A DNA stretch of 64,000 bases from Macrostomum hystrix (taxonomy: Eukaryota > Animalia > Platyhelminthes): contig CATNEN010000039.1 of assembly GCA_950097015.1 (NCBI GenBank), positions 18,414,001 to 18,478,000 of the forward strand. The letters run 5' to 3'. Of this stretch, positions 1,175 to 62,300 are shown piece by piece. The position numbers were made by a program, and so were the translations under genes. The first letter of the stretch is position 1. Every line of letters starts with the position of its first letter. Under the pieces are notes generated by a model, which ran no database searches, was not told the DNA's origin, and saw only the letters and a list, made by a program, of their open reading frames with translations.

Positions 1175-3700
<2,526 letters not shown>

Positions 3701-10244: not shown

Positions 10245-13200
10245 ACTGCAGGAAGGGGTGTCGCAGCAGCTCTGCGGTCTCCGCCCTCCGCTTGGAATCC
10301 CTGGCCACGCAGCGGCGGTAGAAATCTCCCAGATTGTCGGAGGTCCCAGCCGGCAGCGGTGGCAGGTCTTGCTTTTGAATTCGCATTGGGATTTGCATCC
10401 ACGCTAGATTCCCATTCGGAGGCATCATCTGCAGCATCTCGAACACGGTGCAGCCGAACGCCCACACGTCGGTCTTGGGCGAGTACACGATTCGGCCGTC
10501 CTCGCTGTACAGCTCCGGAGCCATGAAGTAGCAGGTGCCGACGAGGTTCTTTGTGCTGCCAAGGGTCGAGTAGATTTCCTTTGCGAGGCCGAAGTCGATC
10601 AGCTTGATGACTCCCTCGTGGGTGAGCATGATGTTGTTGCACTTGATGTCCCTGTGTAGGGTCGGTGTGCTTCGACTGTGCAGGAAGTCGAGTGCCGAAC
10701 AGATCTGCAGGTGTAAAGTTACGCAGAGTGTAGAGTTAATGTGAGCAGCAACAGCCCAGCTTCACTGCCTCATCAGACTGCAACTCACCTGGAATGAGAA
10801 GTCCTTCACCGCTGACTCATTGAAAGGCTTCCGCTGTCGCTGCATCAGTTCAGCAAGGCTGTGTCCTGCGATCAGCTCAGTGAAGATGCACAGCTTTGAG
10901 TTGGATGCTCGCTCAGCCTTGAGAAACAGCACGATGTTCTGGTGTCGAAGGCTGCTCAGCACTGATATCTCCGACATCTGCTGCTGGACTGCGTCATCCA
11001 GAAGGCGAGCGTTGCATGCGGCCTCCAGCTTCACAATCTTGACCGCCACCGTCTGTCGTCTGTCGGTGAAGGCCTTGTACACCTTGCCGAAGCCACCTTC
11101 ACCCAGCAGCTGCTTCTTGCCCTCATCGTCGAGCAGGAAGTCCCAGCTGGCAAAGTCGGCGTCCAGGGACGGCCGGGCACTGGAAGGTCACGGAGGCTGT
11201 GAGTGAGGCGCATTGAGCAGTCCCTCTATCATCAGAGGGAGCATCACCTCTACCTGTGTTGACATGCCCGTGACATCCCTGAGCTGTGCTGACATCCCTA
11301 TAACATCCCTGAGCTGTGCTGACATGCCCATGAAATCCCTCAGCTGTGTTGACATGCCCGTGACATCCCTGAGCTGTGCTGACATCCCCATGACATCCCT
11401 GAGCTGTGCTGACATGCCCATGAAATCCCTCAGCTGTCCTGTAATCCCTTACTTATCCCACAGTGAGCAGTGCTCAGCAGTCAGTAGCCCATGAACTCAC
11501 GGTCGCGGCTGAGTCGTCTCGGGCCGCAGCTGCAAGCCGCCCATCGCCTGAGGCAGCCTCCGCAGCTCCTCATCGGGCGGCTGTGCTCGCTCCGACTGCC
11601 GCCGCAGCCGCTGCTCATCGATCCACTGCAGCAGCCGAGGTCCGTGCCGAGAGTTCAGCCGCGCGTAGTCGGCCAGCGTTTGTCCTTTGCCATCGAGCAG
11701 GTCGAAGGCGGAGTCACCCAGCGTGTCCCAGGTGAGGCGCAGTGAGTCCAGGTCCAGGTGCTGAGCTGCCAGGTGAGCAGGGGTGGCACCGGCTGAGTTT
11801 TTGGCAAGCAGGCAGGCGCGGCCGAGTTCTCTGACGAGCCACTGGAAGGCGGAGCTGCTGGATTCATTCATTGCCGCCATGTGAATCGCGGTGCGATCGA
11901 CTTGTCCTTTCTGGTGGAAGCAGTCTGGACCGAGAAGCGACTTGATGAGCTGCATGGAGTCGGAGCCCTGCTTCCACGCGGCCAGATGGACTGGTGTGTT
12001 GCCTTCTTTGTCTCTCACGGTGAGGCACTCTGGCCCGCAAACCTCCACCAGATACTTGAGGGCGGAGTTGCTGGATTCATTCATTGCCGCCCAGTGAATC
12101 GCGGTGCGATCGAATTGTCCTTTCTGGTGGAAGCAGTCTGGACCGAGAAGCGACTTGATGAGCTGCATGGAGTCGTGGCCCTGCTTCCACGCGGCCAGAT
12201 GGACTGGTGTGTCGCCTAGTCCGTCTCTCACGGTGAGGCACTCTGGCCCGCAAACCTCCACCAGATACTTGAGGGCGGAGTTGCTGGATTCATTCATTGC
12301 CGCCATGTGAATCGCGGTGCGATCGGATCGTCCTTTCTGGTGGAAGCAGTCTGGACCGAGAAGCGACTTGATGAGCTGCATGGAGTCGGAGCCCTGCTTC
12401 CACGCGGCAATATGGACTGGTGTGTTGCCTTCTTTGTCTCTCACGGTGAGGCACTCTGGCCCGCAAACCTCCACCAGATACTTGAGGGCGGAGTTGCTGG
12501 ATGAGTTCTCTGCCGCATTGTGAATCGCGGTTTGATCGAATTGTCCTTTCTGGTGGAAGCAGTCTGGACCGAGAAGCGACTTGATGAGCTGCATGGAGTC
12601 GGAGCCCTGCTTCCACGCGGCCAGATGGATTGGTGTGTTGCCTTGTCCGTCTCTCACTGTGAGGCACTCTGGCCCGCAAACCTCCACCAGATACTTGAGG
12701 GCGGAGTTGCTGGATTCATTCATTGCCGCCCAGTGAATCGCGGTGCGATCGGATCGTCCTTTCTGGTGGAAGCAGTCTGGACCGAGAAGCGACTTGATGA
12801 GCTGCATGGAGTCGGAGCCCTGCTTCCACGCGGCAATATGGACTGGTGTGTTGCCTTCTTTGTCTCTCACGGTGAGGCACTCTGGCCCGCAAACCTCCAC
12901 CAGATACTTGAGGGCGGAGTTGCTGGATGAGTTCTCTGCCGCATTGTGAATCGCGGTTTGATCGAATTGTCCTTTCTGGTGGAAGCAGTCTGGACCGAGA
13001 AGCGACTTGATGAGCTGCATGGAGTCGGAGCCCTGCTTCCACGCGGCCAGATGGATTGGTGTGTTGCCTTGTCCGTCTCTCACTGTGAGGCACTCTGGCC
13101 CGCAAACCTCCACCAGATACTTGAGGGCGGAGTTGCTGGATTCATTCATTGCCGCATGGTGAATCACGGTGCGATCGACTTGTCCTTTCTGGTGGAAGCA

Positions 13201-13725
13201 GTCTGGACCGAGAAGCGACTTGATGAGCTGCATGGAGTCGGAGCCCTGCTTCCACGCGGCCAGATGGACTGGTGTGTTGCCTTTTCCGTCTCTCACTGTG
13301 AGGCACTCTGGCCCGCAAACCTCCACCAGATACTTGAGGGCGGAGTTGCTGGATTCATTCTCTGCCGCCATGTGAATCGCGGTTTGATCGTAATTTCCTT
13401 TCTGGTGGAAGTGGTCGTTGCTGTCCACAGCTCGACGAACGGCCTGCAGCCATGCTCGATCCCGAAACAATGCGGCCAGGTGTACAGTAGTGTTGCCATA
13501 GGAGTTGGTTTCCTCGAGGAAGCCAGGTCCTAGTCGAATAATCAGGGCTTCGAAGCAGCGGAGACCGTCGGGCAACCTCTGGGCGACGTGGTGAGCCAGT
13601 GACTGCTTAAAGCCGAAGGCAGTGAAGCTGGGGTTTGAGTCCACCTGCCGGCACAGACGCAGCAGGCGGTCCGCATCGCGCGCTTCGAGAGCGGCTGCGA
13701 GCTCGGAAGAGGTGGGCGGCGGCAT
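10243..13725 (-). CDS. Ankyrin-repeat array fused to C-terminal STE/MAP3K-like Ser/Thr kinase (about 1025 aa, 3 exons)
   Basis: Exons 13725-11501, 11179-10789, 10704-10243 (phases 2 and 0 join in frame). ANK motifs TPVHLAA/TAIHxAA; kinase motifs GEGGFGKVY, VAVK, EISVL, HRDIKCNN, DFG, GTCYFMAPE, DVWAFG all intact. Confidence 0.92.
11255..11440. repeat. 30-bp tandem repeat in intron 1 of the ANK-kinase gene
   Basis: About 6 copies of CTGTGCTGACATGCCCATGAAATCCCTGAG-like unit. Confidence 0.93.
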
Positions 13726-46400: not shown

Positions 46401-48534
46401 CAGTCAATAATACAATAATACAATCCAACCGTCATCGAGCAGATAATAGTGTATTATTGCACGCTCTCTATGGTCCAAGCCACACATTGATTATAAATTA
46501 TGCTGAGTGTCCAAACCATTCGTCGATGTGATAGAAGCACGGCTTTCTCATGCAGCAACGCCATAGACACTCGTGCGCTTCTCGCGCTTGTGTTCTAGGC
46601 GTTGCTGCACTCAAAAGCCGTGTGCTATGTCCTAGACTATTGAAATAGGCATGGAAAAATACTGAGTTCTAAAATTGGTTGGCTTTTTATTAACTTGGTT
46701 GGCCTTTTTTATGTCTATGGCCAAGAGTGTCGATGCTAAATCAACGGAATGGGTGGGAACACTCCCTGACCGCGCAAGGCAGATTCTCAACTTAGTTGGC
46801 TTAAGTTAGCAATACCTAGCCGAATAAGGCAAAATGTTAAAATCTAGTTTTATAAGACTTTAAAAACTATTCTTGTTTTTAGATCCGTTGTCTATGGCTT
46901 TACCCGCCTGAGCAAATCCATGAGTAGCTCCATTTTATTCACTGATTGCCTGCTCTTTGGTGCCACCATATCTGCCACTGATCCAGGTTTGCCTGTTTGT
47001 TATTATTGCTGCACTATCTGTTCTATTCGCGTGCCAATGCCTCGTATCTATCCATCATGATCACTTTATCAATCAACCTATCAGTCTTTATAAAACATGA
47101 ATAATGTCGACCTATTAATTACTCATAGTGGGGTCTCCATTAGACCCCTTATATATTGCAACAAGTTAGTAAGTGTAGACCGAAATAAAGGGCGGACGGT
47201 CAAGAGGGGATCTAGAGTGCAATTTTCGATCAAGAGGAGGAGGACGTCTCCTATCTGAATACAAGCTCCTGAAATATACGGTAGGGTTGCTGCCACCTTA
47301 GTCAGAAGGGTCAATTGTCTCGGAAGACTTCTCGCTCCTTAGACCTAGCGAAGTCTGTGTTTCTGGGCTCTCGATTGTCTTGTATTTATTGACAGTTTAG
47401 ACCCTTCCTGCTCTGCCATTGGCTGGAGCCTTTCAAGCGCTCTCATTGGCTGGAAAGATCAGGCAGGCGGAAATTCCGTGGGCGTTCCAAAACTGCCATG
47501 GAAAAACCGTGCAAATAACGGCCGAAGTTCTCCTATACTGACAACCTTAAGACGCCAACTAATTATTAGCTTATAGGAAGGATAGATCTCAGGAGTGGGA
47601 TCTAAAGATTCTAAGATTAGTAACTAGTGACTCAGTGCATTATCAAACTCTAATAATTGATCAATCAATTATCCCGCAGTGACCGTACTGGCAATTTTCA
47701 ACGACCTAAACGTAGACGTAGATCTCTACGCGCTAGTGTTTGGCGAGAGCGTCCTAAACGACGCCGTAGCGATTGTCCTAGCCCAGTCTGTGGAAAAATA
47801 CGACAGTCTAATAGCTAGCGGCTCCGCATCTGCCAGTGCTCAGAGCGTTGCCATTGTCACATCAATGCTCAGCTTTCTAGGTGTATTCTTTGGCGCGTTG
47901 AGCATCGGCATTGCAATGGGCTGCCTGACGGCATTAATGACCAAATACACTTTGGTTCGCGATCATCCACTGTTAGAGTGCAGCCTATTCATTCTAATGA
48001 GCTACAGTACTTTCCTAGCGGCTGAAGCTGCTAAAAGTACGGGCATTGTGGCTGTACTATTCTGCGGCATTTCTCAGGCGCATTATACCTATAATAATTT
48101 GTCTAGACAGACAAAGACTTCAACAAAGAGCTTCTTCGAATTATTAAACTTTCTAGCTGAGAATTTCATATTTGTCTACATTGGAGTTACAACTTTTACT
48201 TATCGATCCCACGTCTGGGATCCTGTATTTATCGGCGCCGCCTTCGCCGCCATCCTTATTGGTCGCGCGTTGAACGTTTATCCTCTCTGCTGCCTGCTCA
48301 ATCTGGGCAGGCGTAACCGTATTAGCGCCAACAAGATGCACATGCTTATGTTCTCCGGGCTGCGTGGCGCTATGGCCTTCGCTCTGGCTATTCGGAACAC
48401 GTCCACGGACACTAGGAAGATGCTGTTCTCCACAACCCTAGTCATCGTCATCGCCACCGTGCTGCTGTGCGGCGGATTGGCCACCCAGATGCTGAACTGG
48501 CTGCGGCTCCGGTTAGTTAGTCTGTCTGTCTGCC

Positions 48535-48571
<37 letters not shown>

Positions 48572-51500
48572 TTCTGTCAATCTGTCTGTCTGACTGTCTC
48601 TCTGTCTGTCTGTCTGCCTGTCTGTCTGCTATTTGACTGTAAAACTTTCTAGTCTTCAAAATTTCCTCATAATTTATAATGCTCCGAGTCGCTAAAGCTT
48701 TCTTATTATATTATTTAAACATATTTCAGTGTTGGAGTTGAGGGAGATAACGGAACTTTCAATCACGAAGCCGGGACACCTGTAAGTTCAAGCTATTACC
48801 CATTTTTTATGAGAAAGCTCTAACCAATCACTTTTGCAGGCATCCTCATAATAAACCAATTAATCCCCATCTCATCTCATATTTATCCCCACCTAGATAT
48901 TTATCCCCATCACACATTAATTTATACCGATCGTATATCTATTTCTTGCCATCACATATATTTATCCTCATTCCAGATTTATTTATCCCAATCAAATTTC
49001 TATTTATTCTCATTCCATATCTGTTCATCTGCATCCAAAATATATTTATCTCATCGCATATTTAGTAATCCGTATTAAATATATAATTATCCCCATTTCA
49101 ATAGCCAGTTATACCCCCTTCCCAACATCCCATTGAGTAACCAGGTAAAATTTCCCATCTAATTGTCTATCGTGTATTTTTAGGAATCCGACGATGAAAC
49201 ACTCAGTTTGGACAGTTACTGTTTAATTGCTCAGGTAGATTCGTTTAGGAATTTCAGAGGACAAACACACCTTAGAGTTGAATTTTAGCTCATTATTAAC
49301 ACGGTGGAGGTATTTTATTGATTAAAATCTTATATTTTTCTCAACCTAGAATTGCAGCCGGTCTGCATTTTGGTAACATTTAATTACCATTTACCGTAGT
49401 TGTTAACCAGTTACATTGTTATTAACCAATTAAAATCGTTTATGCAATATATAACAATATGATTAGCAAAACTTCTCTAATAATTTTTTTGGCAAACCGT
49501 AAAATGAATATATAATTTCAAGTAGTTATATTTATTGAGCTAATCAGTAACCCAACAATTTTAACAATACCTATTTGATTTGAAACGCAAATAATTAATT
49601 TTTAGCAAATATTGTCACTTTACATTTTCGTGTCCTTACTGTATTGTTGTTAGTAGCTAATTATGGGCATCAGTATCCGTATTATTTATTGATTAAATTC
49701 CCAGAGCCCTGGAGGAGATTGCGCGGGCTTAGAGGATGCTAGCGACATTGCACAGTCGCCAGTGATCACGACGCGAGGTCGTTGCCGACCCTGCGAACAC
49801 AAATATCAGGGACGATTGGCCAAGTTCTGGCACAAGCTGGACACGAGGTGAGTCACGACTCTACAGCACATTTAGACAGCACTAAACCAAACAGGGCAAA
49901 CCTGAACCTGAAATGACAATCCTGGACCCAGAACGACAATCATGAACCTGAAATGACAATCCTGGACCCAAAACGACAATCCTGAACCCGAAATGACAAT
50001 CCTGGACCCAGAACGACAATCCTGAACCTGAAATGACAAACCTGAACCTGAAGTGACAAACCTGAGCCCAAAACGACAAACCTGAGCCCGAAATGACAAA
50101 CCTGAACCTGAAATTACAAAACTGAACCTGAAATGACAAACCTGAGCTTGAAATGACAAACCCAATCCCGAAATGACAAACCTGAACCCGAAGTGACACA
50201 TCTGAACCTGAAATGACAATCCTGAACCCGAAATGACAAACATGAACCCGAAATGACACATCTGAACCTGAAATGACAATCCTGAACCCATAATGACAAA
50301 CCTAAACTTGAAATGACAATGCTGAATCCTAAATGACAATTCTGGACCCAAAATGATAGAAATGAAGTTAAAATTTAAATCGTAGACCCAAAATGACAAT
50401 CCCGAGCCAAAAAGATCAGTAGCACATAACCTGAAAACTGTAGCACATAATCTGAAAACTGTAGCACATAACCTGAAAACTGTAGCACATAACCTGAAAA
50501 CTGTAGCACATAACCTGAAAACTGTAGCACATAATCTGAAAACTGTAGCACATAACCTGAAAACTGTAGCACATAATCTGAAAACTGTAGCACATAATCT
50601 GAAAACTGTAGCACATAATCTGAAAACTGTAGCACATAATCTGAAAACTGTAGCACATAATCTGAAAACTGTAGCACATAACCTGAAAACTGTAGCACAT
50701 AATCTGAAAACTGTAGCACATAATCTGAAAACTGTAGCACATAATCTGAAAACTGTAGCACATAACCTGAAAACTGTAGCAGATAATCTGAAAACTGTAG
50801 CACATAACCTGAAAACTGTAGCAGATAATCTGAAAACTGTAGCACATAATCTGAAAACTGTAGCACATAATCTGAAAACTGTAGCACATAATCTGAAAAC
50901 TGTAGCACATAATCTGAAAACTGTAGCACATAATCTGAAAACTGTAGCACATAACCTGAAAACTGTAGCACATAATCTGAAAACTGTAGCACATAACCTG
51001 AAAACTGTAGCACATAATCTGAAAACTGTAGCACATAATCTGAAAACTGTAGCAGATAAATTTTTACGAGTTAAAAATTCATTTTACTAACAATTGATTT
51101 GTGCGCCTCTGTGTGATTGTGTTATCGCACTTACGCAGCATCAGTCGCCATAGAATCAACGTAATTAAAATCCTATTTTCAGGTACCTGAAGCCGCTGTT
51201 CACTCACGCCAGACCCCTGCTGACTGAGACCTGCCCACCAGTCTGTCTGCCATTGGCCCGCCTGCTCACCACCAATGAGCAACTGACATTGGTGAGTGGC
51301 TTTTCAGATAAGAGTGTTATGGTTTTTTTTAGATAGTTTTCTGATAGCTGGTGAGTAGTGTTTTATGATAGCTGGTGAGTAGTGTTTTATGATAGCTGGT
51401 GAGTAGTGTTATGTGATAGCTGGTGAGTAGTGTTATGTGATAGCTGGTGAGTAGTGTTATGTGATAGCTGGTGAGCAGTGTTATGTGATAGCTGGTGAGT

Positions 51501-52507: not shown

Positions 52508-54465
52508 ACACTCCGACTGTCTAAATCCCACACTCAGACTGGTCTCAATCCCACACTCAGACTGGTCTCAATCCCACACTCTGACTGGTGTCAATCCCAT
52601 ACTCAGACTGGTCTCAATCCCACACTCAGACTGGTCTCAATCCCACACTCAGACTGGTCTCAATCCCACACTCAGACTGGTCTCAATCCCACACTCCGAC
52701 TGTCTAAATCCCACACTCAGACTGGTCTCAATCCCACACTCAGACTGGTCTCAATTCCATACTCAGACTGGTCTCAATCCCACACTCAGACTGGTCTCAA
52801 TCCCACACTCAGACTGGTCTCAATCCCACACTCAGACTGGTCTCAATTCCACACTCTGACTGGTCTCAATCCCACACTCAGACTGGTCTCAATCCCACAC
52901 TCAGACTGGTCTCAATCCCACACCCTGATTGGTCTCAATCCCATACTCAGACTGGTCTCAATCCCACACTCAGACTGGTCTCAATCCCACACTCAGACTG
53001 GTCTCAATTCCATACTCAGACTGGTCTCAATCCCACACTCCGACTGTCTAAATCCCACACTCAGACTGGTCTCAATCCCACACTCAGACTGGTCTCAATT
53101 CCATACTCAGACTGGTCTCAATCCCACACTCAGACTGGTCTCAATCCCACACCCTGACTGGTCTCAATCCCATACTCAGACTGGTCTCAATCCCACACTC
53201 AGACTGGTCTCAATCCCACACTCAGACTGGTCTCAATCCCACACTCAGACTGGTCTCAATCCCACACTCTGACTGGTCTCAATCCCACACTCAGACTGGT
53301 CTCAATCCCACACTCTGACTGGTCTCAATCCCACACTCAGACTGGTCTCGATCCCACACTCCGACTGGTCTCAATCCCACACTCAGACTGGTCTCAATCC
53401 CACACTCAGACTGGTCTCAATCCCACACTCAGACTGGTCTCAATCCCACACTCTGAATGGTCTCAATCCCACACTCAGACTGGTCTCAATCCCACACTCC
53501 GACTGGTCTCAATCCCACACTCAGACTGGTCTCAATCCTACACTCAGACTGGTCTCAATCCCACACTCTGACTGGTCTCAATTCCACACTCTGACTGGTC
53601 TCAATCCCACACTCAGACTGGTCTCAATCCCACACTCAGACTGGTCTCAATCCCACACTCAGACTGGTCTCAATCCCACACTCTGACTGGTCTCAATCCC
53701 ACACTCTGACTGGTCTCAATCCCACACTCTGACTGGTCTCAATCCCACACTCCGACTGGTCTCAATCCCACACTCTGACTGGTCTCAATCCCACACTCTG
53801 ACTGGTCTCAATCCCACACCCTGACTGGTCTCAATCCCACACTCAGACTGGTCTCAATCCCACACTCAGACTGGTCTCAATCCCACACTCTGAATGGTCT
53901 CAATCCCACACTCAGACTGGTCTCAATCCCACACTCCGACTGGTCTCAATCCCACACTCAGACTGGTCTCAATCCTACACTCAGACTGGTCTCAATCCCA
54001 CACTCTGACTGGTCTCAATTCCACACTCTGACTGGTCTCAATCCCACACTCTGACTGGTCTCAATCCCACACTCAGACTGGTCTCGATCCCACACTCCGA
54101 CTGGTCTCAATCCCACACTCAGACTGGTCTCAATCCCACACTCCGACTGGTCTCAATCCCACACTCTGACTGGTCTCAATCCCACACTCTGACTGGTCTC
54201 AATCCCACACTCCGACTGTCTAAATCCCACACTCAGACTGGTCTCAATCCCACACTCTGACTGGTCTCAATCCCACACCCTGACTGGTCTCAATCCCACA
54301 CTCAGACTGGTCTCAATCCCACACTCCGACTGTCTAAATCCCACACTCAGACTGGTCTCAATCCCACACTCTGACTGGTCTCAATCCCACACCCTGACTG
54401 GTCTCAATCCCACACTCTGACTGGTCTCAATCCCATACTCCGACTGGTCTCAATCCCATACTCAA
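52508..54465. repeat. 23-bp tandem satellite
   Basis: About 85 copies of TCCCACACTCAGACTGGTCTCAA. Confidence 0.98.
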
Positions 54466-54794: not shown

Positions 54795-55160
54795 CTTAAT
54801 GACATCAGATCAATGACTCTAATGTCATCAGATCAATTACCCTGATGACATTAGATTAATGACCCTGAAGACATCAGATTAATGACCCTGAAGACATCAG
54901 ATTAATGACCCTGATGACGTCAGATTAATGACCCTGAAGACATCAGATTAATGACCCTGATGACGTCAGATTAATGACCCTGAAGACATCAGATTAATGA
55001 CCCTGAAGACATCAGATTAATGACCCTGATGACGTCAGATTAATGACCCTGAAGACATCAGATTAATGACCCTGATGACGTCAGATTAATGACCCTGAAG
55101 ACATCAGATTAATGACCCTGATGACGTCAGATTAATGACCCTGAAGACATCAGATTAATC
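54795..55160. repeat. 23-bp minisatellite upstream of the periphilin-like CDS
   Basis: GATTAATGACCCTGAAGACATCA alternating with GATTAATGACCCTGATGACGTCA. Confidence 0.95.
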
Positions 55161-55201
55161 ATCCAAAGTAAAATGTTCCAGCGCGGAGAACAGACAGTGC
55201 A

Positions 55202-56587
55202 ATGAGCGCCAGCGATCACATTCCTCCTTCACTGGTGGCGCCGTCTCGCCACTGCATCTACATTCGCGGCCTGTCGGCCAAGCTGCGCGCTGATGATGTC
55301 AGGCGGTTCTTTGTTGACAAAGAGTACAACTGCTCGATTGACTTCTTCACCTACACCAACAATAAGAGTCTGCTAAGTGTGGCCTTGCGCTTTGATTCCC
55401 ACGACATCGCCAGGGAGATGATGCAGAAGTACGACGACAACAATCTTCTGGGCTGTCGGGTTAGCATTGTCTGGTTTCGCAACATGTTGAAGGCGCGAGA
55501 ACGCGTGCGCGCGGATCCGGAACTGCGAGAACGGCTTCAGAGAATGGGCGCCGGCGGGTTTGCCAACAGGTCGAACTACGGCGGAGGCCGCGGTAGCTCT
55601 GGCCGCAGCGGATTAGGTAGGCCTTACGGATATGGCCATCAGCAGCATCAGCAGCAGGCGCACTATTCTAATAACAGCGAAAGTCGAGGCTATCGTCGAT
55701 CCCGATCTAGATCCCAATCTCGATCGAGAGTTAGATCGCATTCAAGATCCCAATCTCGAGATTGGACTCGATCCAGATCCAGATCCCAATATCGATCCCA
55801 GTCTAGATCCCGTTCCGGGTCACAGTCGAGGTCTCAGCAGCGGTCCAGGTCCCGGTCTCCGTCCCGCACTCCGTCTGGCAGCGGTTACAGGCAGCAGCAG
55901 CAGCAGCAGCAGCTGTCGTCGCCGCCGCAGTTTTCAGATTCCCAGCACATCAGCAGGGATAAAAAGCGAAAAAAGCACAGAAAGAGGCGCAGAAGCAGCA
56001 GCGGCGGCGGCGGCAGCGGCAGCAAAAGCAGCGCCAGCAGCATCAGCAACTCCAGCCGGCATCGTCGTCCGCACAGCAGTCGAAGGAGCAGCCGAAGCAG
56101 TCGGCCGGGTCGATTTGATGCAGCCGTTGGTGGCAGCGGCGACCGGCTGTCGCCTTTACAGCCTCCGCCGCCTCCACCGTCTCTGCCGCCAGCGCCGCCG
56201 CCGCCGCCGCCGCAGGAGTCGCCGCCGGATTCGCCGCACCTGCCACCGGCGCCGCCGGATTCGGCTTTGGCCAACTCGTTGGCAGCCGCTGCTGCCGCAG
56301 CCGACGCGGCCGACGCTTCGCCGGGTAGCAGCGCCGGAGCCGGGCGCGCCCTTTCCGAGTCGAGTCTGCGCAAATTGCGCCTGAAAAAAACCGAATTAGA
56401 AGAATCCTACAGGCAGGACTGCGACACCTTCACCATTGTGGTGAAGATGCTCATCAGCAAGGATCCGCAGCTGGAGATTCGGATTCGGGCAGCCCTGAAG
56501 GAGACTCTGCGCGAGATTGGCCAGCAGTGCGTTGAAGAGCTGCGCGACTATGTGCGCCATCTTGATGATAATCAGGCTGCGATCTGA
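55202..56587 (+). CDS. RRM + RS-rich + periphilin-1-like C-terminal domain protein (461 aa, single coding exon)
   Basis: N-terminal RRM-like fold (IYIRGL..DVRRFF..ALRFDSHDIA..LLGCRVSIVW), RG/RS and Pro-rich middle, C-terminal YRQDCDTFTIVVKMLISKDPQLE..ALKETLREIGQQCVEEL matching from memory the PPHLN1 motif YRQDCETFGMVVKMLIEKDPSLE. Confidence 0.88.
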   Translation: MSASDHIPPSLVAPSRHCIYIRGLSAKLRADDVRRFFVDKEYNCSIDFFTYTNNKSLLSVALRFDSHDIAREMMQKYDDNNLLGCRVSIVWFRNMLKARERVRADPELRERLQRMGAGGFANRSNYGGGRGSSGRSGLGRPYGYGHQQHQQQAHYSNNSESRGYRRSRSRSQSRSRVRSHSRSQSRDWTRSRSRSQYRSQSRSRSGSQSRSQQRSRSRSPSRTPSGSGYRQQQQQQQLSSPPQFSDSQHISRDKKRKKHRKRRRSSSGGGGSGSKSSASSISNSSRHRRPHSSRRSSRSSRPGRFDAAVGGSGDRLSPLQPPPPPPSLPPAPPPPPPQESPPDSPHLPPAPPDSALANSLAAAAAAADAADASPGSSAGAGRALSESSLRKLRLKKTELEESYRQDCDTFTIVVKMLISKDPQLEIRIRAALKETLREIGQQCVEELRDYVRHLDDNQAAI

Positions 56588-56859
56588 GGCAACTTGGCTT
56601 TGCAACCGCTTAGCGACGTGGCAATATTTGGTTGCTAATACTGTTGCTTTTGAGACTGAATCACTTTACTTTGTCTCTCTAGTTTTGTTAGAAAACTTTC
56701 TTTTTTAATTCGATTCTGTGTGTGGTTAGTGCCTTTGTTCTATTTCAAACAACATCGGATAAATGTGCTGTGGGTAACTGGGACATGTTATCGATTGGTG
56801 GATCAGTTGGCCTGTGGCTCATGAGGTGGCCATGTGACCTCTCTTTCACCATAGTCATA

Positions 56860-57857
56860 AAAAGTGGATCAATTGATTTTTGTCACCTGTGTCATAAAAG
56901 GCGGTCAATTGACCTTTCTGTCACCTGTGTCATAAAAGGTGGTTAATTGACCTCTCTGTCACCTGTGTCATAAAAGGCGGTTAATTAACCTCTCTGTCAC
57001 CTGTGTCATAAAAGGCGGTTAATTGACCTCTCTGTCACCTGTGTCATAAAAGGCGGTAAATTTACCTTTCTGTCACCTGTGTCATAAAAGGCGGTTAATT
57101 GACCTTTCCTGTCATCTGTGTCATGAAAGGCGGTCAACTGACCTCTCTGTCACCTGTGTCATAAAAGTGGATCAATTGACCTCTCTGTCATCTGTGTCAT
57201 GAAAGGCGGTCAATTGACCTCTCTGTCACATGTGTCATAAAAGGCGGTTAATTAACCTCTCTGTCACCTGTGTCATAAAAGGCGGTTAATTAACCTCTCT
57301 GTCACCTGTGTCATAAAAGGCGGTCAATTGACCTCTCTGTCATCTGTGTCATGAAAGGCGGTCAATTGACCTCTCTGTCACCTGTGTCATAAAAGGCGGT
57401 TTATTGACCTTTCTGTCACCTGTGTCATAAAAGGTGGTTAATTAACCTCTCTGTCACCTGTGTCATAAAAGGCGGTTAATTGACCTCTCTGTCACCTGTG
57501 TCATAAAAGGTGGTTAATTGACCTCTCTGTCACCTGTGTCATAAAAGGCGGTTAATTAACCTCTCTGTCACCTGTGTCATAAAAGGCGGTTAATTGACCT
57601 CTCTGTCACCTGTGTCATAAAAGGCGGTTAATTGACCTCTCTGTCACCTGTGTCATAAAAGGCGGTCAATTGACCTCTCTGTCACCTGTGTCATAAAAGG
57701 CGGTTAATTGACCTTTCTGTCACCTGTGTCATAAAAGGCGGTTAATTGACCTTTCTGTCACCTGTGTCATAAAAGGCGGTTAATTGACCTTTCTGTCACC
57801 TGTGTCATAAAAGGTGGTTAATTGACCTTTCTGTCACCTGTGTCATAAAAGGCGGTC
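56860..57857. repeat. 38-bp minisatellite
   Basis: About 26 copies of CTCTGTCACCTGTGTCATAAAAGGCGGTTAATTGACCT. Confidence 0.96.
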
Positions 57858-59327: not shown

Positions 59328-62300
59328 ATGATCTCTGTCTTCGTTTTTTTGCTTCCCATCGGCTCTTTAGCTGTTTCATATCAGTGCAAAGATAGCTACT
59401 TTCAAAGTAACAAAAGAGAAATTATAACAACTGAAGAATCTATAGCTAATGGTGCTGTAGCATTGAAGACGCTTCATGCTTCATCATTACAATCTTGTGA
59501 GATGGCCTGCTGCAAGTACTATGGATGCAATGTTGCTATATATGAAACCACTGTAAGTATTTCTCCTAAGTACACATATTTTGTACCGTATTTTATTTTT
59601 AGTAAGTTAAGGAAATTAAGACTTGTCATGAGATAGCTTGCTATTTGAATAATTAAACCTTATAGGTTTAGCTTTTATTGTTCTCATATGTCAAATTTTA
59701 AATATAAACTGATTCTTTTTTAAAAGGCAAAAAATAGCCCACTGTAATTTTAGCTACACATTTTTGTTTATATAAAACAAAATGAAAATATATAAATTCA
59801 AGACTTTCAGAGAAAATGTTTTCAGTACTGTATATGCTTAAAAAGTTCTACTTAAATACCAATGAATATTCAAGCTAGACCCACTTTGTTTGGTTGTTGA
59901 AAACCTGGAAAATTTCTACTTAGCAATATACATTTTTAGCTTTTTTAGCATTTGCTATTATAAGAAATAAAGAATAAACAATATAAAAATTATATAATAA
60001 AAAGTATGTTAACTTAAAGCAAATATGTTTAATCACAGTTCTTGCTTAAACAGATACATTATATTAAACTTAATCATGTTATATATTAAATATTTTCATA
60101 CTGATCGTCTAGTAATGTGTCATATAGGCTCCTATAAATTTCTTTTTAGACAAAGAATCTTTGCTACCTATTCAACTGTGGCGAGGATGCCAGCCTGTGT
60201 GAATTCAAGCAGCATTCACGATACACTGCCAGTATCAGAATCAGCAACAGACTCAAACCATTTGAGCATGTGCCTGGCGAATTGAATGTGAGGGTCATCA
60301 AATGGCACACACAGCCAACTGCAGAAACCACTGCTACATGTGAGTTCAGTAATGACTAGTTTATGTGAGCTATTGTTTATTAATTACAGATTGAACCTTG
60401 GGGAATTAAAATCACTTACAGGACACTCAAGATTGGTGTAAGTATTAAATCTGTGTAAATGAAAATTGTTTGTTGAATTTTTTCGTCGACTAAAACTAAA
60501 ATTATTTTTTAAATTCAATGTCATTCAATTGTCTTCTGTGCATGTAGCACTAAAATTGCAAAATGAGTATTATTGTTTATTGCTTCAGATTTTTTGTAAG
60601 CTACTTTCTTATAAATGATGTGTTATTTTGTTTAAGTGTATGTCGATATAAAAAATTTGTGCGAAATAAAAAGCATGAAACATGACTTTGCAGCGCATGT
60701 TAACCTTAAAACTAAAGTGAAAATATATTGCCCAGCTAATCATTATTTTCTAACTTAACTTACAAAACGTAAACCTTTTACCTATAGCATAAAAATACAA
60801 ATTAGTTAACAAATCTAACCACTAACTCAAATTAGTTGCTAGACAGCTGCGTGCTCACAGGCGGCAGCAGCAGCAGCATCCCTGGTGCCCCCACCCGCCA
60901 GACATGCAGTTCCAATGCAAAGATGCCAATAAATTCCCGAGCTGCGTGGCCATCTACGATCGCTGCGACGGGTTTCCGCAGTGCGGTGACTCCAGCGACG
61001 AGGCCGACTGCTCAAAGTTGAGCGGTGAGAAATCCTGCATCAGACAGAAGAATCCCCACTTGTCAAATATTGTCAGAATAATACTCGCTTGTCAAATATT
61101 GTCAGAAGAATCCTCAGTTGTCAAATCTTGTCAGAGGAATCCCTACTTGTCAAATATTGTCAGAATAATACTCGCTTGTCAAATATTGTCAGAACAATCC
61201 TCACTTGTCAAATATGGTCAGAACAATCCTCACTTGTCAAATATGGTCAGAAGAATTCTCACTTGTCAAATATTGTCAGAAGAATACTCGCTTGTCAAAT
61301 ATTGCCAGAAGAATACTCGCTTGTCAAATCTTGTCAGAAGAATCCTCAGTTGTCAAATCTTGTCAGAAGAATCCTCAGTTGTCAAATATTGTCAGAAGAA
61401 TCCTCACTTGTCAAATATGGTCAGAACAATCCTCACTTGTCAAATATGGTCAGAACAATCCTCACTTGTCAAATATGGTCAGAACAATCCTCACTTGTCA
61501 AATATTGTCAGAAGAATACTCGCTTGTCAAATATTGTCAGAAGAATACCCGCTTGTCAAATCTTGTCAGAAGAATCCTCAGTTGTCAAATCTTCTCAGAA
61601 GAATCCTCAGTTGTCAAATCTTGTCAGAGGAATCCTCAGTTGTCAAATCTTGTCAGAGGAATCCTCAGTTGTCAAATCTTGTCAGAAGAATCCTCACTTG
61701 TCAAATCTTGTCAGAAGAATCCTCACTTGTCAAACTTTGTCAGAAGAATCCTCACTTGTCAAACTTTGTCAGAAGAATCCTCAACATTGTAGACCTCAGC
61801 GCTTAAGCTAGTATTAAAAGTATTTATTAACGGAAAATAAAGGAAAATGGCTAACCATTGTTTATCTGTAGAATAACCTCCATTTTATTCTAACGAAACA
61901 ATTAAAATTTGATTGGCAGTCTAATTAATCACTATTGGCAGAGTGGCAGAGCGGTCTTGTGTGATTCCCTCTCGCCCCAAGGTCAATGAGCTCGTGTCCG
62001 CGGCGAGGCCTTATTCATTTGTCGCTATGAGGGGCTAGCCTGTAAGGAACAATGAGATTATACCTGCGTGAGTAAAATGGGCAAAATTGTTATCTAAAAT
62101 CTCCACTTTTTGTTGAGCTCCTTTGAAACAATCGCACCTCTCGAGAACGTCGAAATATCCAAAGAATCTGGCAGAAGCTTCAGTAATGCATCCTTAGTAC
62201 GGACTTCATCACTTCTGAATTTCATCAGCTTGTCAAATGTGATATTTTTTGTGTTAAAGCCATTTGTTAAAGCCATAACTCAGAAAATTTAATGAAATCA

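What the first reader, a model, noticed from the sequence alone, without database searches (positions are those of the whole stretch)
55202..56587. Invertebrate periphilin-like (HUSH) domain fused to an RRM and SR-like region
Seen: the last about 70 aa closely follow the periphilin-1 C-terminal helical domain, while the N-terminus is an RRM followed by RG- and RS-dipeptide tracts. Known: in human HUSH this domain dimerises and binds TASOR, and periphilin binds RNA through a disordered Arg/Tyr-rich region rather than an RRM; HUSH silences L1 and intronless retro-DNA and is mostly studied in vertebrates. Inference: an ancestral or lineage-specific SR-protein-like periphilin linking splicing-type RNA recognition to HUSH-like silencing in a repeat-laden genome.
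Basis: partly seen in the sequence, partly recalled or inferred. Interest (0 to 1): 0.82.

Follow-up and report, generated by a model that had tools for sequence, protein, structure and literature searches.

The report
Flatworm periphilin gene with RRM
This is an intact, intron-free flatworm gene joining an RNA-recognition-motif domain and an Arg/Ser-rich stretch to the periphilin C-terminal domain, which is the usual, already auto-annotated but unstudied form of periphilin in invertebrates, not a new fusion.

Summary
Window 55202-56587 (+) is one 461-aa open frame.

- **Periphilin domain.** Its last ~70 aa match Pfam Periphilin_C (E 1e-27) and human periphilin-1 in PDB 6swg (E 6e-17). All four human residues shown to be needed for dimerisation or TASOR binding are conserved.
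- **RRM.** The N-terminus is a real but divergent RRM. On its own it scores below Pfam's cut-off. A 9-sequence family profile, an AlphaFold model and Foldseek all point to RRMs.
- **RS region.** 42 RS/SR dipeptides and a short RG/Tyr tract follow the RRM.

The architecture is neither new nor lineage-specific. The same RRM + RS + Periphilin_C layout occurs in Macrostomum lignano, Schistosoma, an annelid, Caenorhabditis and two sea stars. It is auto-annotated in UniProt, Pfam and the ESM Atlas, and C. elegans melo-1 is called periphilin 1.

This genome has three paralogues. The window copy is the only one without introns and has the shortest branch in the RRM tree. The scan already met a paralogue on other DNA of this genome (s1-278242) and reached the same verdict.

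The HUSH role is untested. The genome holds pseudo-PARP (DUF3715), TASOR alpha/beta and MORC domains, but I could not show a complete TASOR-like partner or an MPP8. Verdict: an ordinary new member of a known, unstudied family.

The parts
55202..56587 (+). Complete single-exon coding sequence, 461 aa plus stop, of a periphilin-family protein
55253..55474 (+). Divergent RRM core, aa 18-91 (strand-helix-strand-strand-helix-strand). RNP2 is IYIRGL with Tyr20 kept. RNP1 is LLSVALRF, lacking the aromatic residues at positions 3 and 5; Ala61 is invariant in the family.
55484..55549 (+). Two predicted helices after the RRM (aa 95-116). The conserved W-F-(K/R) motif lies just upstream, at the end of strand 4 (aa 91-93).
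55562..55681 (+). Gly/Arg/Tyr/Gln-rich low-complexity tract (aa 121-160) with 4 RG/GR dipeptides
55682..55906 (+). RS domain (aa 161-235): 26 Ser and 22 Arg in 75 residues, 31 RS/SR dipeptides
55961..55993 (+). Basic cluster KKRKKHRKRRR (aa 254-264). I read it as a nuclear localisation signal from the sequence alone.
   Evidence: sequence; the function is inferred
56102..56368 (+). Pro/Ala-rich linker (aa 301-389), low complexity
56369..56569 (+). Periphilin C-terminal domain (aa 390-456). Leu417, Leu424, Ile428 and Leu447 correspond to human L326, L333, I337 (dimer interface) and L356 (TASOR contact).

Best explanation
The ORF is a functional member of the periphilin family in its ancestral bilaterian form. 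It has an N-terminal divergent RRM, an RG/Tyr tract, an RS domain, a basic cluster that is probably a nuclear localisation signal, a Pro/Ala linker, and the C-terminal helical-hairpin domain. Shown here: the domain identities, conservation of the four residues that in human periphilin make the homodimer and contact TASOR, the wide taxonomic spread of the layout, and purifying selection. Inferred: the C-terminal domain dimerises and docks onto two helices of a TASOR-like scaffold. The RRM plus RS/RG region holds the complex on nascent RNA or on the splicing machinery, doing the job that the disordered Arg/Tyr-rich N-terminus does in vertebrates. The complex would then lead to chromatin silencing of transcribed repeats. 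The window copy is one of three paralogues in this Macrostomum-type genome. It is the only one without introns and has the shortest branch in the RRM tree.
For: Periphilin_C E 1e-27 and 6swg E 6e-17. Human L326/L333/I337/L356, needed for TASOR binding and silencing (PMC7544229), align to Leu417/Leu424/Ile428/Leu447. RRM shown by profile, model and fold search. Same architecture in M. lignano, Schistosoma, Owenia, C. nigoni, Patiria and Asterias, and in Atlas clusters of nematodes (RRM_1 in 92% of members) and flatworms. dN/dS against the paralogues is 0.15-0.34, with dS at 1.1 or more and too saturated to estimate in one of the five comparisons. The window copy has the shortest branch in the RRM tree. 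In the C-terminal tree its terminal branch is flagged as long, but its root-to-tip path is the shortest of the Macrostomum copies. The genome holds two DUF3715 pseudo-PARP exons, one matching human TASOR 6tl1 at E 3e-6, one TASOR alpha/beta domain and three MORC S5 loci. TASOR-like proteins are reported throughout metazoa (PMC10578480).
Against: The RRM keeps only one of the three canonical RNA-stacking aromatic residues (Tyr20); RNP1 position 3 is Ser and position 5 is an invariant Ala, so RNA binding is not assured. No gene with the full TASOR layout was shown: the DUF3715 exons and the alpha/beta domain lie at different loci, PIN_TASOR gave nothing, and the M. lignano orthologue of the contig 8 gene has DUF3715 only. 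MPP8 was not resolved. No functional study of any RRM-bearing periphilin was found.
Confidence: 0.55

Rival explanations
1. An SR-like splicing or mRNP factor that works independently of any HUSH-like complex. In this reading the periphilin C-terminal domain is only a dimerisation module, and the protein regulates splicing or mRNA processing.
For: The N-terminal RRM followed by a 75-aa RS domain meets the formal layout of SR proteins. The best fold match is the SR-like splicing factor Tra2-beta. C. elegans melo-1/periphilin 1 came out as a central node in an inferred neuronal splicing-regulator network (PMC12084653). No complete TASOR or MPP8 was shown here.
Against: The TASOR-contact residue (human L356, here Leu447) and the whole hairpin are conserved across phyla. 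That is easier to explain by a conserved partner than by dimerisation alone. The melo-1 result is a network inference, and its authors state that no splicing role is established.
Confidence: 0.3
2. The RRM is a protein-binding pseudo-RRM rather than an RNA binder. RNA contact, if any, would come from the RG/Tyr and RS tracts, as in vertebrate periphilin.
For: RNP1 lacks its basic first residue and both aromatic residues (window LLSVALRF). Ala at RNP1 position 5 is invariant in all nine family members. Two helices follow strand 4 in the model and could cover the sheet.
Against: Tyr/Phe at RNP2 position 2 is conserved in every member, and Phe at RNP1 position 3 is kept in the annelid, nematode and Patiria proteins. 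The best sequence match, La RRM1, has a similarly degenerate RNP1 and is, to my knowledge, an RNA binder.
Confidence: 0.3
3. A decaying retrocopy of one of the intron-bearing paralogues, with no function of its own.
For: It is the only one of three copies without introns. It sits between minisatellite arrays. No orthologue was returned from M. lignano.
Against: The 461-aa frame is intact, with both domains and the key residues in place. dN/dS is 0.15-0.34 at saturated dS. Its branch is the shortest in the RRM tree, and its root-to-tip path is the shortest of the Macrostomum copies in the C-terminal tree.
Confidence: 0.05

Closest known systems
Human periphilin-1 (PPHLN1), HUSH subunit; structure 6SWG
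   Same: The C-terminal helical hairpin is shared: 66 aligned residues at E 6e-17, with L326, L333, I337 and L356 all conserved. Both have a Ser/Arg-rich, Tyr-containing low-complexity region upstream.
   Different: Human periphilin is described as disordered over residues 20-291 and as relying on an Arg/Tyr-rich N-terminal domain (PMC7544229). The window protein has a folded RRM at its N-terminus and a true RS-dipeptide domain.
Invertebrate 'RRM domain-containing protein' periphilins: Schistosoma P0003/P0004, Owenia P0006, C. nigoni P0007 (C. elegans melo-1/periphilin 1), Patiria P0005, Asterias P0008
   Same: Same order of parts: RRM with the conserved motifs SRH-x-LF-IRG, ALRF and WFK, then an RS-rich region, then Periphilin_C.
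   Different: The window protein is shorter (461 against 583-761 aa), is encoded without introns, and has Ser instead of Phe at RNP1 position 3.
Macrostomum lignano BOX15_Mlig022724g1 (P0001) and Mlig019216g2 (P0002) and their orthologues in this genome (contig 10 and contig 8)
   Same: Same family and layout. They are 59% (contig 10) and about 53% (contig 8) identical to the window copy in the RRM, and 56% and 53% identical in the C-terminal domain.
   Different: They are paralogues, not orthologues, of the window copy. The contig 10 gene has an intron after the RRM-linker exon, and the contig 8 gene has one inside the RRM. Both are more diverged in the two domains.
Classical SR and SR-like splicing factors (e.g. 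Tra2-beta, SRSF1)
   Same: An N-terminal RRM followed by an RS domain. Tra2-beta is the best structural match of the RRM model.
   Different: The RNP1 motif is degenerate, the RS domain is internal, and a periphilin domain sits at the C-terminus. No splicing function was tested.

Membership tests
Periphilin family (Pfam PF25234 Periphilin_C) | C-terminal domain scores above the curated cut-off | tested here: met
   96.7 bits against a cut-off of 27, E 9.9e-28, profile positions 17-83 of 84; 6swg_A E 5.8e-17
Periphilin family | Hydrophobic dimer-interface residues (human L326, L333, I337) | tested here: met
   They align to Leu417, Leu424 and Ile428 (alignment, residues checked; their roles are from PMC7544229)
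Periphilin family | TASOR-contact leucine (human L356) | tested here: met
   It aligns to Leu447
Periphilin family | Physical binding to TASOR in a 2:1 complex | not testable with these tools
   This needs a multimer model or biochemistry
RRM (Pfam PF00076) | Own sequence scores above the Pfam gathering score | tested here: not met
   14.6 bits against 20.7, E 0.03
RRM (Pfam PF00076) | Homology by family profile, and the strand-helix-strand-strand-helix-strand fold | tested here: met
   The profile hits over 100 PDB RRM chains, best E 7e-8. Orthologues from Owenia (21.0 bits) and C. nigoni (30.1 bits) pass the cut-off. Model pLDDT is 80, and the listed Foldseek matches are RRM proteins or complexes containing one.
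RRM (Pfam PF00076) | Canonical RNP2 and RNP1 aromatic residues for RNA stacking | tested here: inconclusive
   Tyr20 at RNP2 is kept. RNP1 position 3 is Ser and position 5 is an invariant Ala.
SR proteins (N-terminal RRM plus an RS domain of at least 50 aa with more than 40% RS content; definition from my own knowledge of the Manley and Krainer nomenclature) | RRM followed by a long RS-dipeptide domain | tested here: met
   In aa 161-235, 48 of 75 residues are Arg or Ser, with 31 RS/SR dipeptides
SR proteins | Activity in splicing | not testable with these tools
   No assay was possible. I file it as SR-like only.
HUSH-like complex | TASOR-like partner (DUF3715-SPOC-DomI...) encoded in the same genome | tested here: inconclusive
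   DUF3715 lies at contig 8 position 4453682 (6tl1 E 3e-6) and contig 38 position 2294312. TASOR_alpha-beta lies at contig 38 position 7974042. These are separate loci. PIN_TASOR was absent, and the model of a putative SPOC region was unusable at pLDDT 38.
HUSH-like complex | MPP8-like chromodomain plus ankyrin protein | tested here: inconclusive
   There are 27 chromodomain hits, none within 5 kb of a listed ankyrin hit, but only 150 of 2155 ankyrin candidates were scored
HUSH-like complex | MORC-type effector present | tested here: met
   Three Morc6_S5 loci, best E 2.6e-22. This is not specific to HUSH.

The most novel reading that the evidence does not exclude
RRM-bearing periphilin is the ancestral RNA-recognition subunit of a HUSH-like silencing complex that predates vertebrates. 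In this reading, vertebrates replaced a folded RRM plus RS domain with a disordered Arg/Tyr region. In this flatworm the slow-evolving, intron-free copy would work with TASOR-like and MORC proteins to silence transcribed repeats, directly linking the splicing-factor-type protein architecture to intron-sensitive silencing.
Probability: 0.3. Interest if true: 0.6.

Novelty: new member of a known kind. Interest (0 to 1): 0.3.

Why it matters
How HUSH recognises nascent, intron-poor RNA is still debated, and human periphilin offers only a disordered region to study. Invertebrate periphilins, from flatworms and nematodes to echinoderms, carry a folded RRM and an RS domain. This gives a structurally tractable handle on that question, in animals where RNAi is routine. 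The fact is visible in automatic annotation, but I found no paper that discusses it. This particular gene adds one more member, plus the detail that Macrostomum keeps three paralogues.

Tried and rejected
1. A word search restricted to aa 385-461 returned nothing, although the full-length search had found eight relatives with that same domain. I treat this as a limit of the tool, not as absence.
I used the Owenia homologue instead.
3. A single-sequence AlphaFold model of the region after the contig 8 DUF3715 exon, made to test for a SPOC domain, had pLDDT 38 and was not searched. Pfam and PDB sequence searches of that region were blank.
4. ORFs upstream of the TASOR alpha/beta exon gave no Pfam or PDB match.
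5. PIN_TASOR was not found.
6. Looking for chromodomain and ankyrin hits close together, as a proxy for MPP8, was unresolved.
7. The C-terminal domain tree is unresolved at depth because the domain is so short.
8. The large representative-protein search was not run.
9. The paralogues were analysed exon by exon.
10. The window is not human-like: its best relatives are Macrostomum proteins.

Full report
**What is there.**
Window 55202-56587 (+) is a single open frame of 461 codons starting at ATG. The frame is open for only ten codons upstream. The overlapping ORFs in other frames are by-products of the low-complexity middle part.

The last 67 residues match Pfam Periphilin_C at E 9.9e-28 (96.7 bits against a cut-off of 27). 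They match the crystallised C-terminal fragment of human periphilin-1, 6swg_A, at E 5.8e-17.

Prigozhin et al. (PMC7544229) showed that L326, L333 and I337 form the periphilin dimer interface. They also showed that L356 contacts TASOR, and that mutating any of these abolishes TASOR pull-down. In the alignment these positions are Leu417, Leu424, Ile428 and Leu447 of the window protein (checked). All four are conserved.

**The RRM.**
The window protein alone gives only a sub-threshold RRM_1 hit (E 0.03, 14.6 bits against 20.7). I therefore aligned its first 120 residues with eight homologous N-termini (A1).
- A profile of that alignment hits more than 100 RRM chains in the PDB. The best are La RRM1 at E 7e-8, then hnRNP D/A1, FUS and Tra2-beta.
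- Seven of the nine members hit RRM_1, best E 2.4e-8. The Owenia and C. nigoni proteins pass Pfam's cut-off on their own.
- An AlphaFold model (pLDDT 80) shows strand-helix-strand-strand-helix-strand followed by two helices.
- The listed Foldseek matches are RRM proteins or complexes that contain one, with Tra2-beta first.

The fold is therefore real. By the La alignment, RNP2 is IYIRGL with the aromatic Tyr20 kept. RNP1 reads L-L-S-V-A-L-R-F. It has no basic residue at position 1, Ser at position 3 (Phe in the annelid, nematode and Patiria proteins) and an Ala at position 5 that is invariant in the family. RNA binding is plausible but not assured.

**The middle of the protein.**
The parts, all, are:
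- aa 121-160: a Gly/Arg/Tyr/Gln tract with 4 RG/GR dipeptides;
- aa 161-235: 26 Ser and 22 Arg, with 31 RS/SR dipeptides (42 in the whole protein);
- aa 254-264: the basic cluster KKRKKHRKRRR, which I read as a nuclear localisation signal by inference;
- aa 301-389: a Pro/Ala-rich linker.

**Relatives.**
The full-length word search found eight proteins, all with Periphilin_C: two from Macrostomum lignano, two from Schistosoma, and one each from Owenia (annelid), Caenorhabditis nigoni, Patiria and Asterias (echinoderms).
- All of them begin with the same RRM-type domain and have an RS-rich middle.
- Several are named 'RRM domain-containing protein' by UniProt, and the C. nigoni protein carries PF00076 + PF25234 in the precomputed annotation.
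- The ESM Atlas holds a nematode cluster (Periphilin_C in 97% of members, RRM_1 in 92%) and a flatworm cluster (98% and 20%).
- A C. elegans splicing atlas names melo-1 as periphilin 1 and lists it among putative splice factors. Its authors state that no splicing role is established (PMC12084653).

The layout is thus the ordinary invertebrate form, present in both protostomes and deuterostomes, and so ancestral to bilaterians by inference. In six literature searches I found no paper that discusses it. Human periphilin is described as disordered over residues 20-291, so the RRM was probably lost on the line to vertebrates. I did not test this directly.

**This genome.**
The assembly is 220 Mb in 42 contigs. 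The best relatives are M. lignano proteins at 89% (contig 10 copy against P0001) and 73% (contig 8 copy against P0002), so it is a Macrostomum species other than M. lignano.

There are three paralogues:
- the window copy on contig 39;
- a copy on contig 10, with an intron containing a minisatellite right after the RRM-linker exon;
- a copy on contig 8, with an intron inside the RRM.

I analysed these exon by exon and did not build or search a joined spliced model. The window copy has no intron.

It is about 59% identical to the contig 10 copy and about 53% to the contig 8 copy in the RRM. In the C-terminal domain the figures are 56% and 53%. dN/dS is 0.15-0.34, with dS at 1.1 or more, and dS could not be estimated for one of the five comparisons.

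In the RRM tree the Macrostomum copies group together (support 91/92) and the window copy has the shortest branch. In the C-terminal tree its own terminal branch is flagged as long. Its total path from the unresolved base is still the shortest of the three Macrostomum copies. Its best identity there (53%) is to the Patiria protein.

It is therefore an old, constrained gene, not a decaying retrocopy. Origin by retroposition is possible but not shown.

The gene sits in a 1.7-kb island between minisatellite arrays.

**Possible partners.**
- DUF3715 pseudo-PARP exons lie at contig 8 position 4453682 and contig 38 position 2294312. The first matches human TASOR 6tl1 at E 2.9e-6.
- A TASOR alpha/beta domain lies at contig 38 position 7974042.
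- There are three MORC S5 loci.
- PIN_TASOR gave nothing.
- The M. lignano orthologues of the contig 8 gene are 'DUF3715 domain-containing proteins' with no other recognisable TASOR domain.
- A model of a possible SPOC region was unusable.
- MPP8 could not be resolved.

Published work reports TASOR-like proteins throughout metazoa (PMC10578480). Other notes of the scan on this genome mention TASOR-like, DomII+PIN and MPP8-like genes. I used those only as leads.

**Verdict.**
The family assignment is secure. The HUSH role stays an inference: it rests on conserved contact residues and on the presence of some partner-type domains. The scan had already found a paralogue of this gene on other DNA of the same genome and reached the same conclusion (s1-278242). 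Interest is modest.

Noticed in passing
window 52508-54464, 54801-55159 and 56835-57856: Three minisatellite arrays flank the gene closely: 23 bp x 85 copies, 23 bp x 15.6 copies (ending about 40 bp before the ATG) and 38 bp x 27 copies. The intron of the contig 10 paralogue is also filled by a minisatellite of roughly 21 bp (L002, minus strand, about 1100-1430).
   Followed up: partly
window 11497-13725 (-): A 742-aa ORF made almost wholly of ankyrin repeats (Ank_2 E 6e-71), with a weak Beta-TrCP_D hit near the N-terminus. It has no chromodomain, so it is not an MPP8 candidate.
   Followed up: partly
window 60904-61806 (+): A 300-aa ORF with a hAT C-terminal dimerisation region (E 4e-12) and a weak LDL-receptor class A hit. 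It is probably a hAT transposase remnant.
   Followed up: no
window 47679-48593 (+) and 2699-3700 (+): Exon-sized ORFs of a Na+/H+ exchanger (E 8e-42) and of an MFS transporter (E 7e-14). These look like ordinary host genes.
   Followed up: no
window 55173-55205 (+): A short upstream ORF (ATG TTC CAG ... TGA) overlaps the start codon of the periphilin ORF. The TTCCAG just before it could be a spliced-leader acceptor site.
   Followed up: no
L017 1694-5143 (G000 contig 8, 4454693-4458142, +): The exon after the DUF3715 domain is a 1150-aa open frame. Its middle is a long, nearly perfect tandem peptide repeat (TPVPVSIATMAPAV...). Its first 330 aa are 57-59% identical to M. lignano DUF3715 proteins.
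   Followed up: partly
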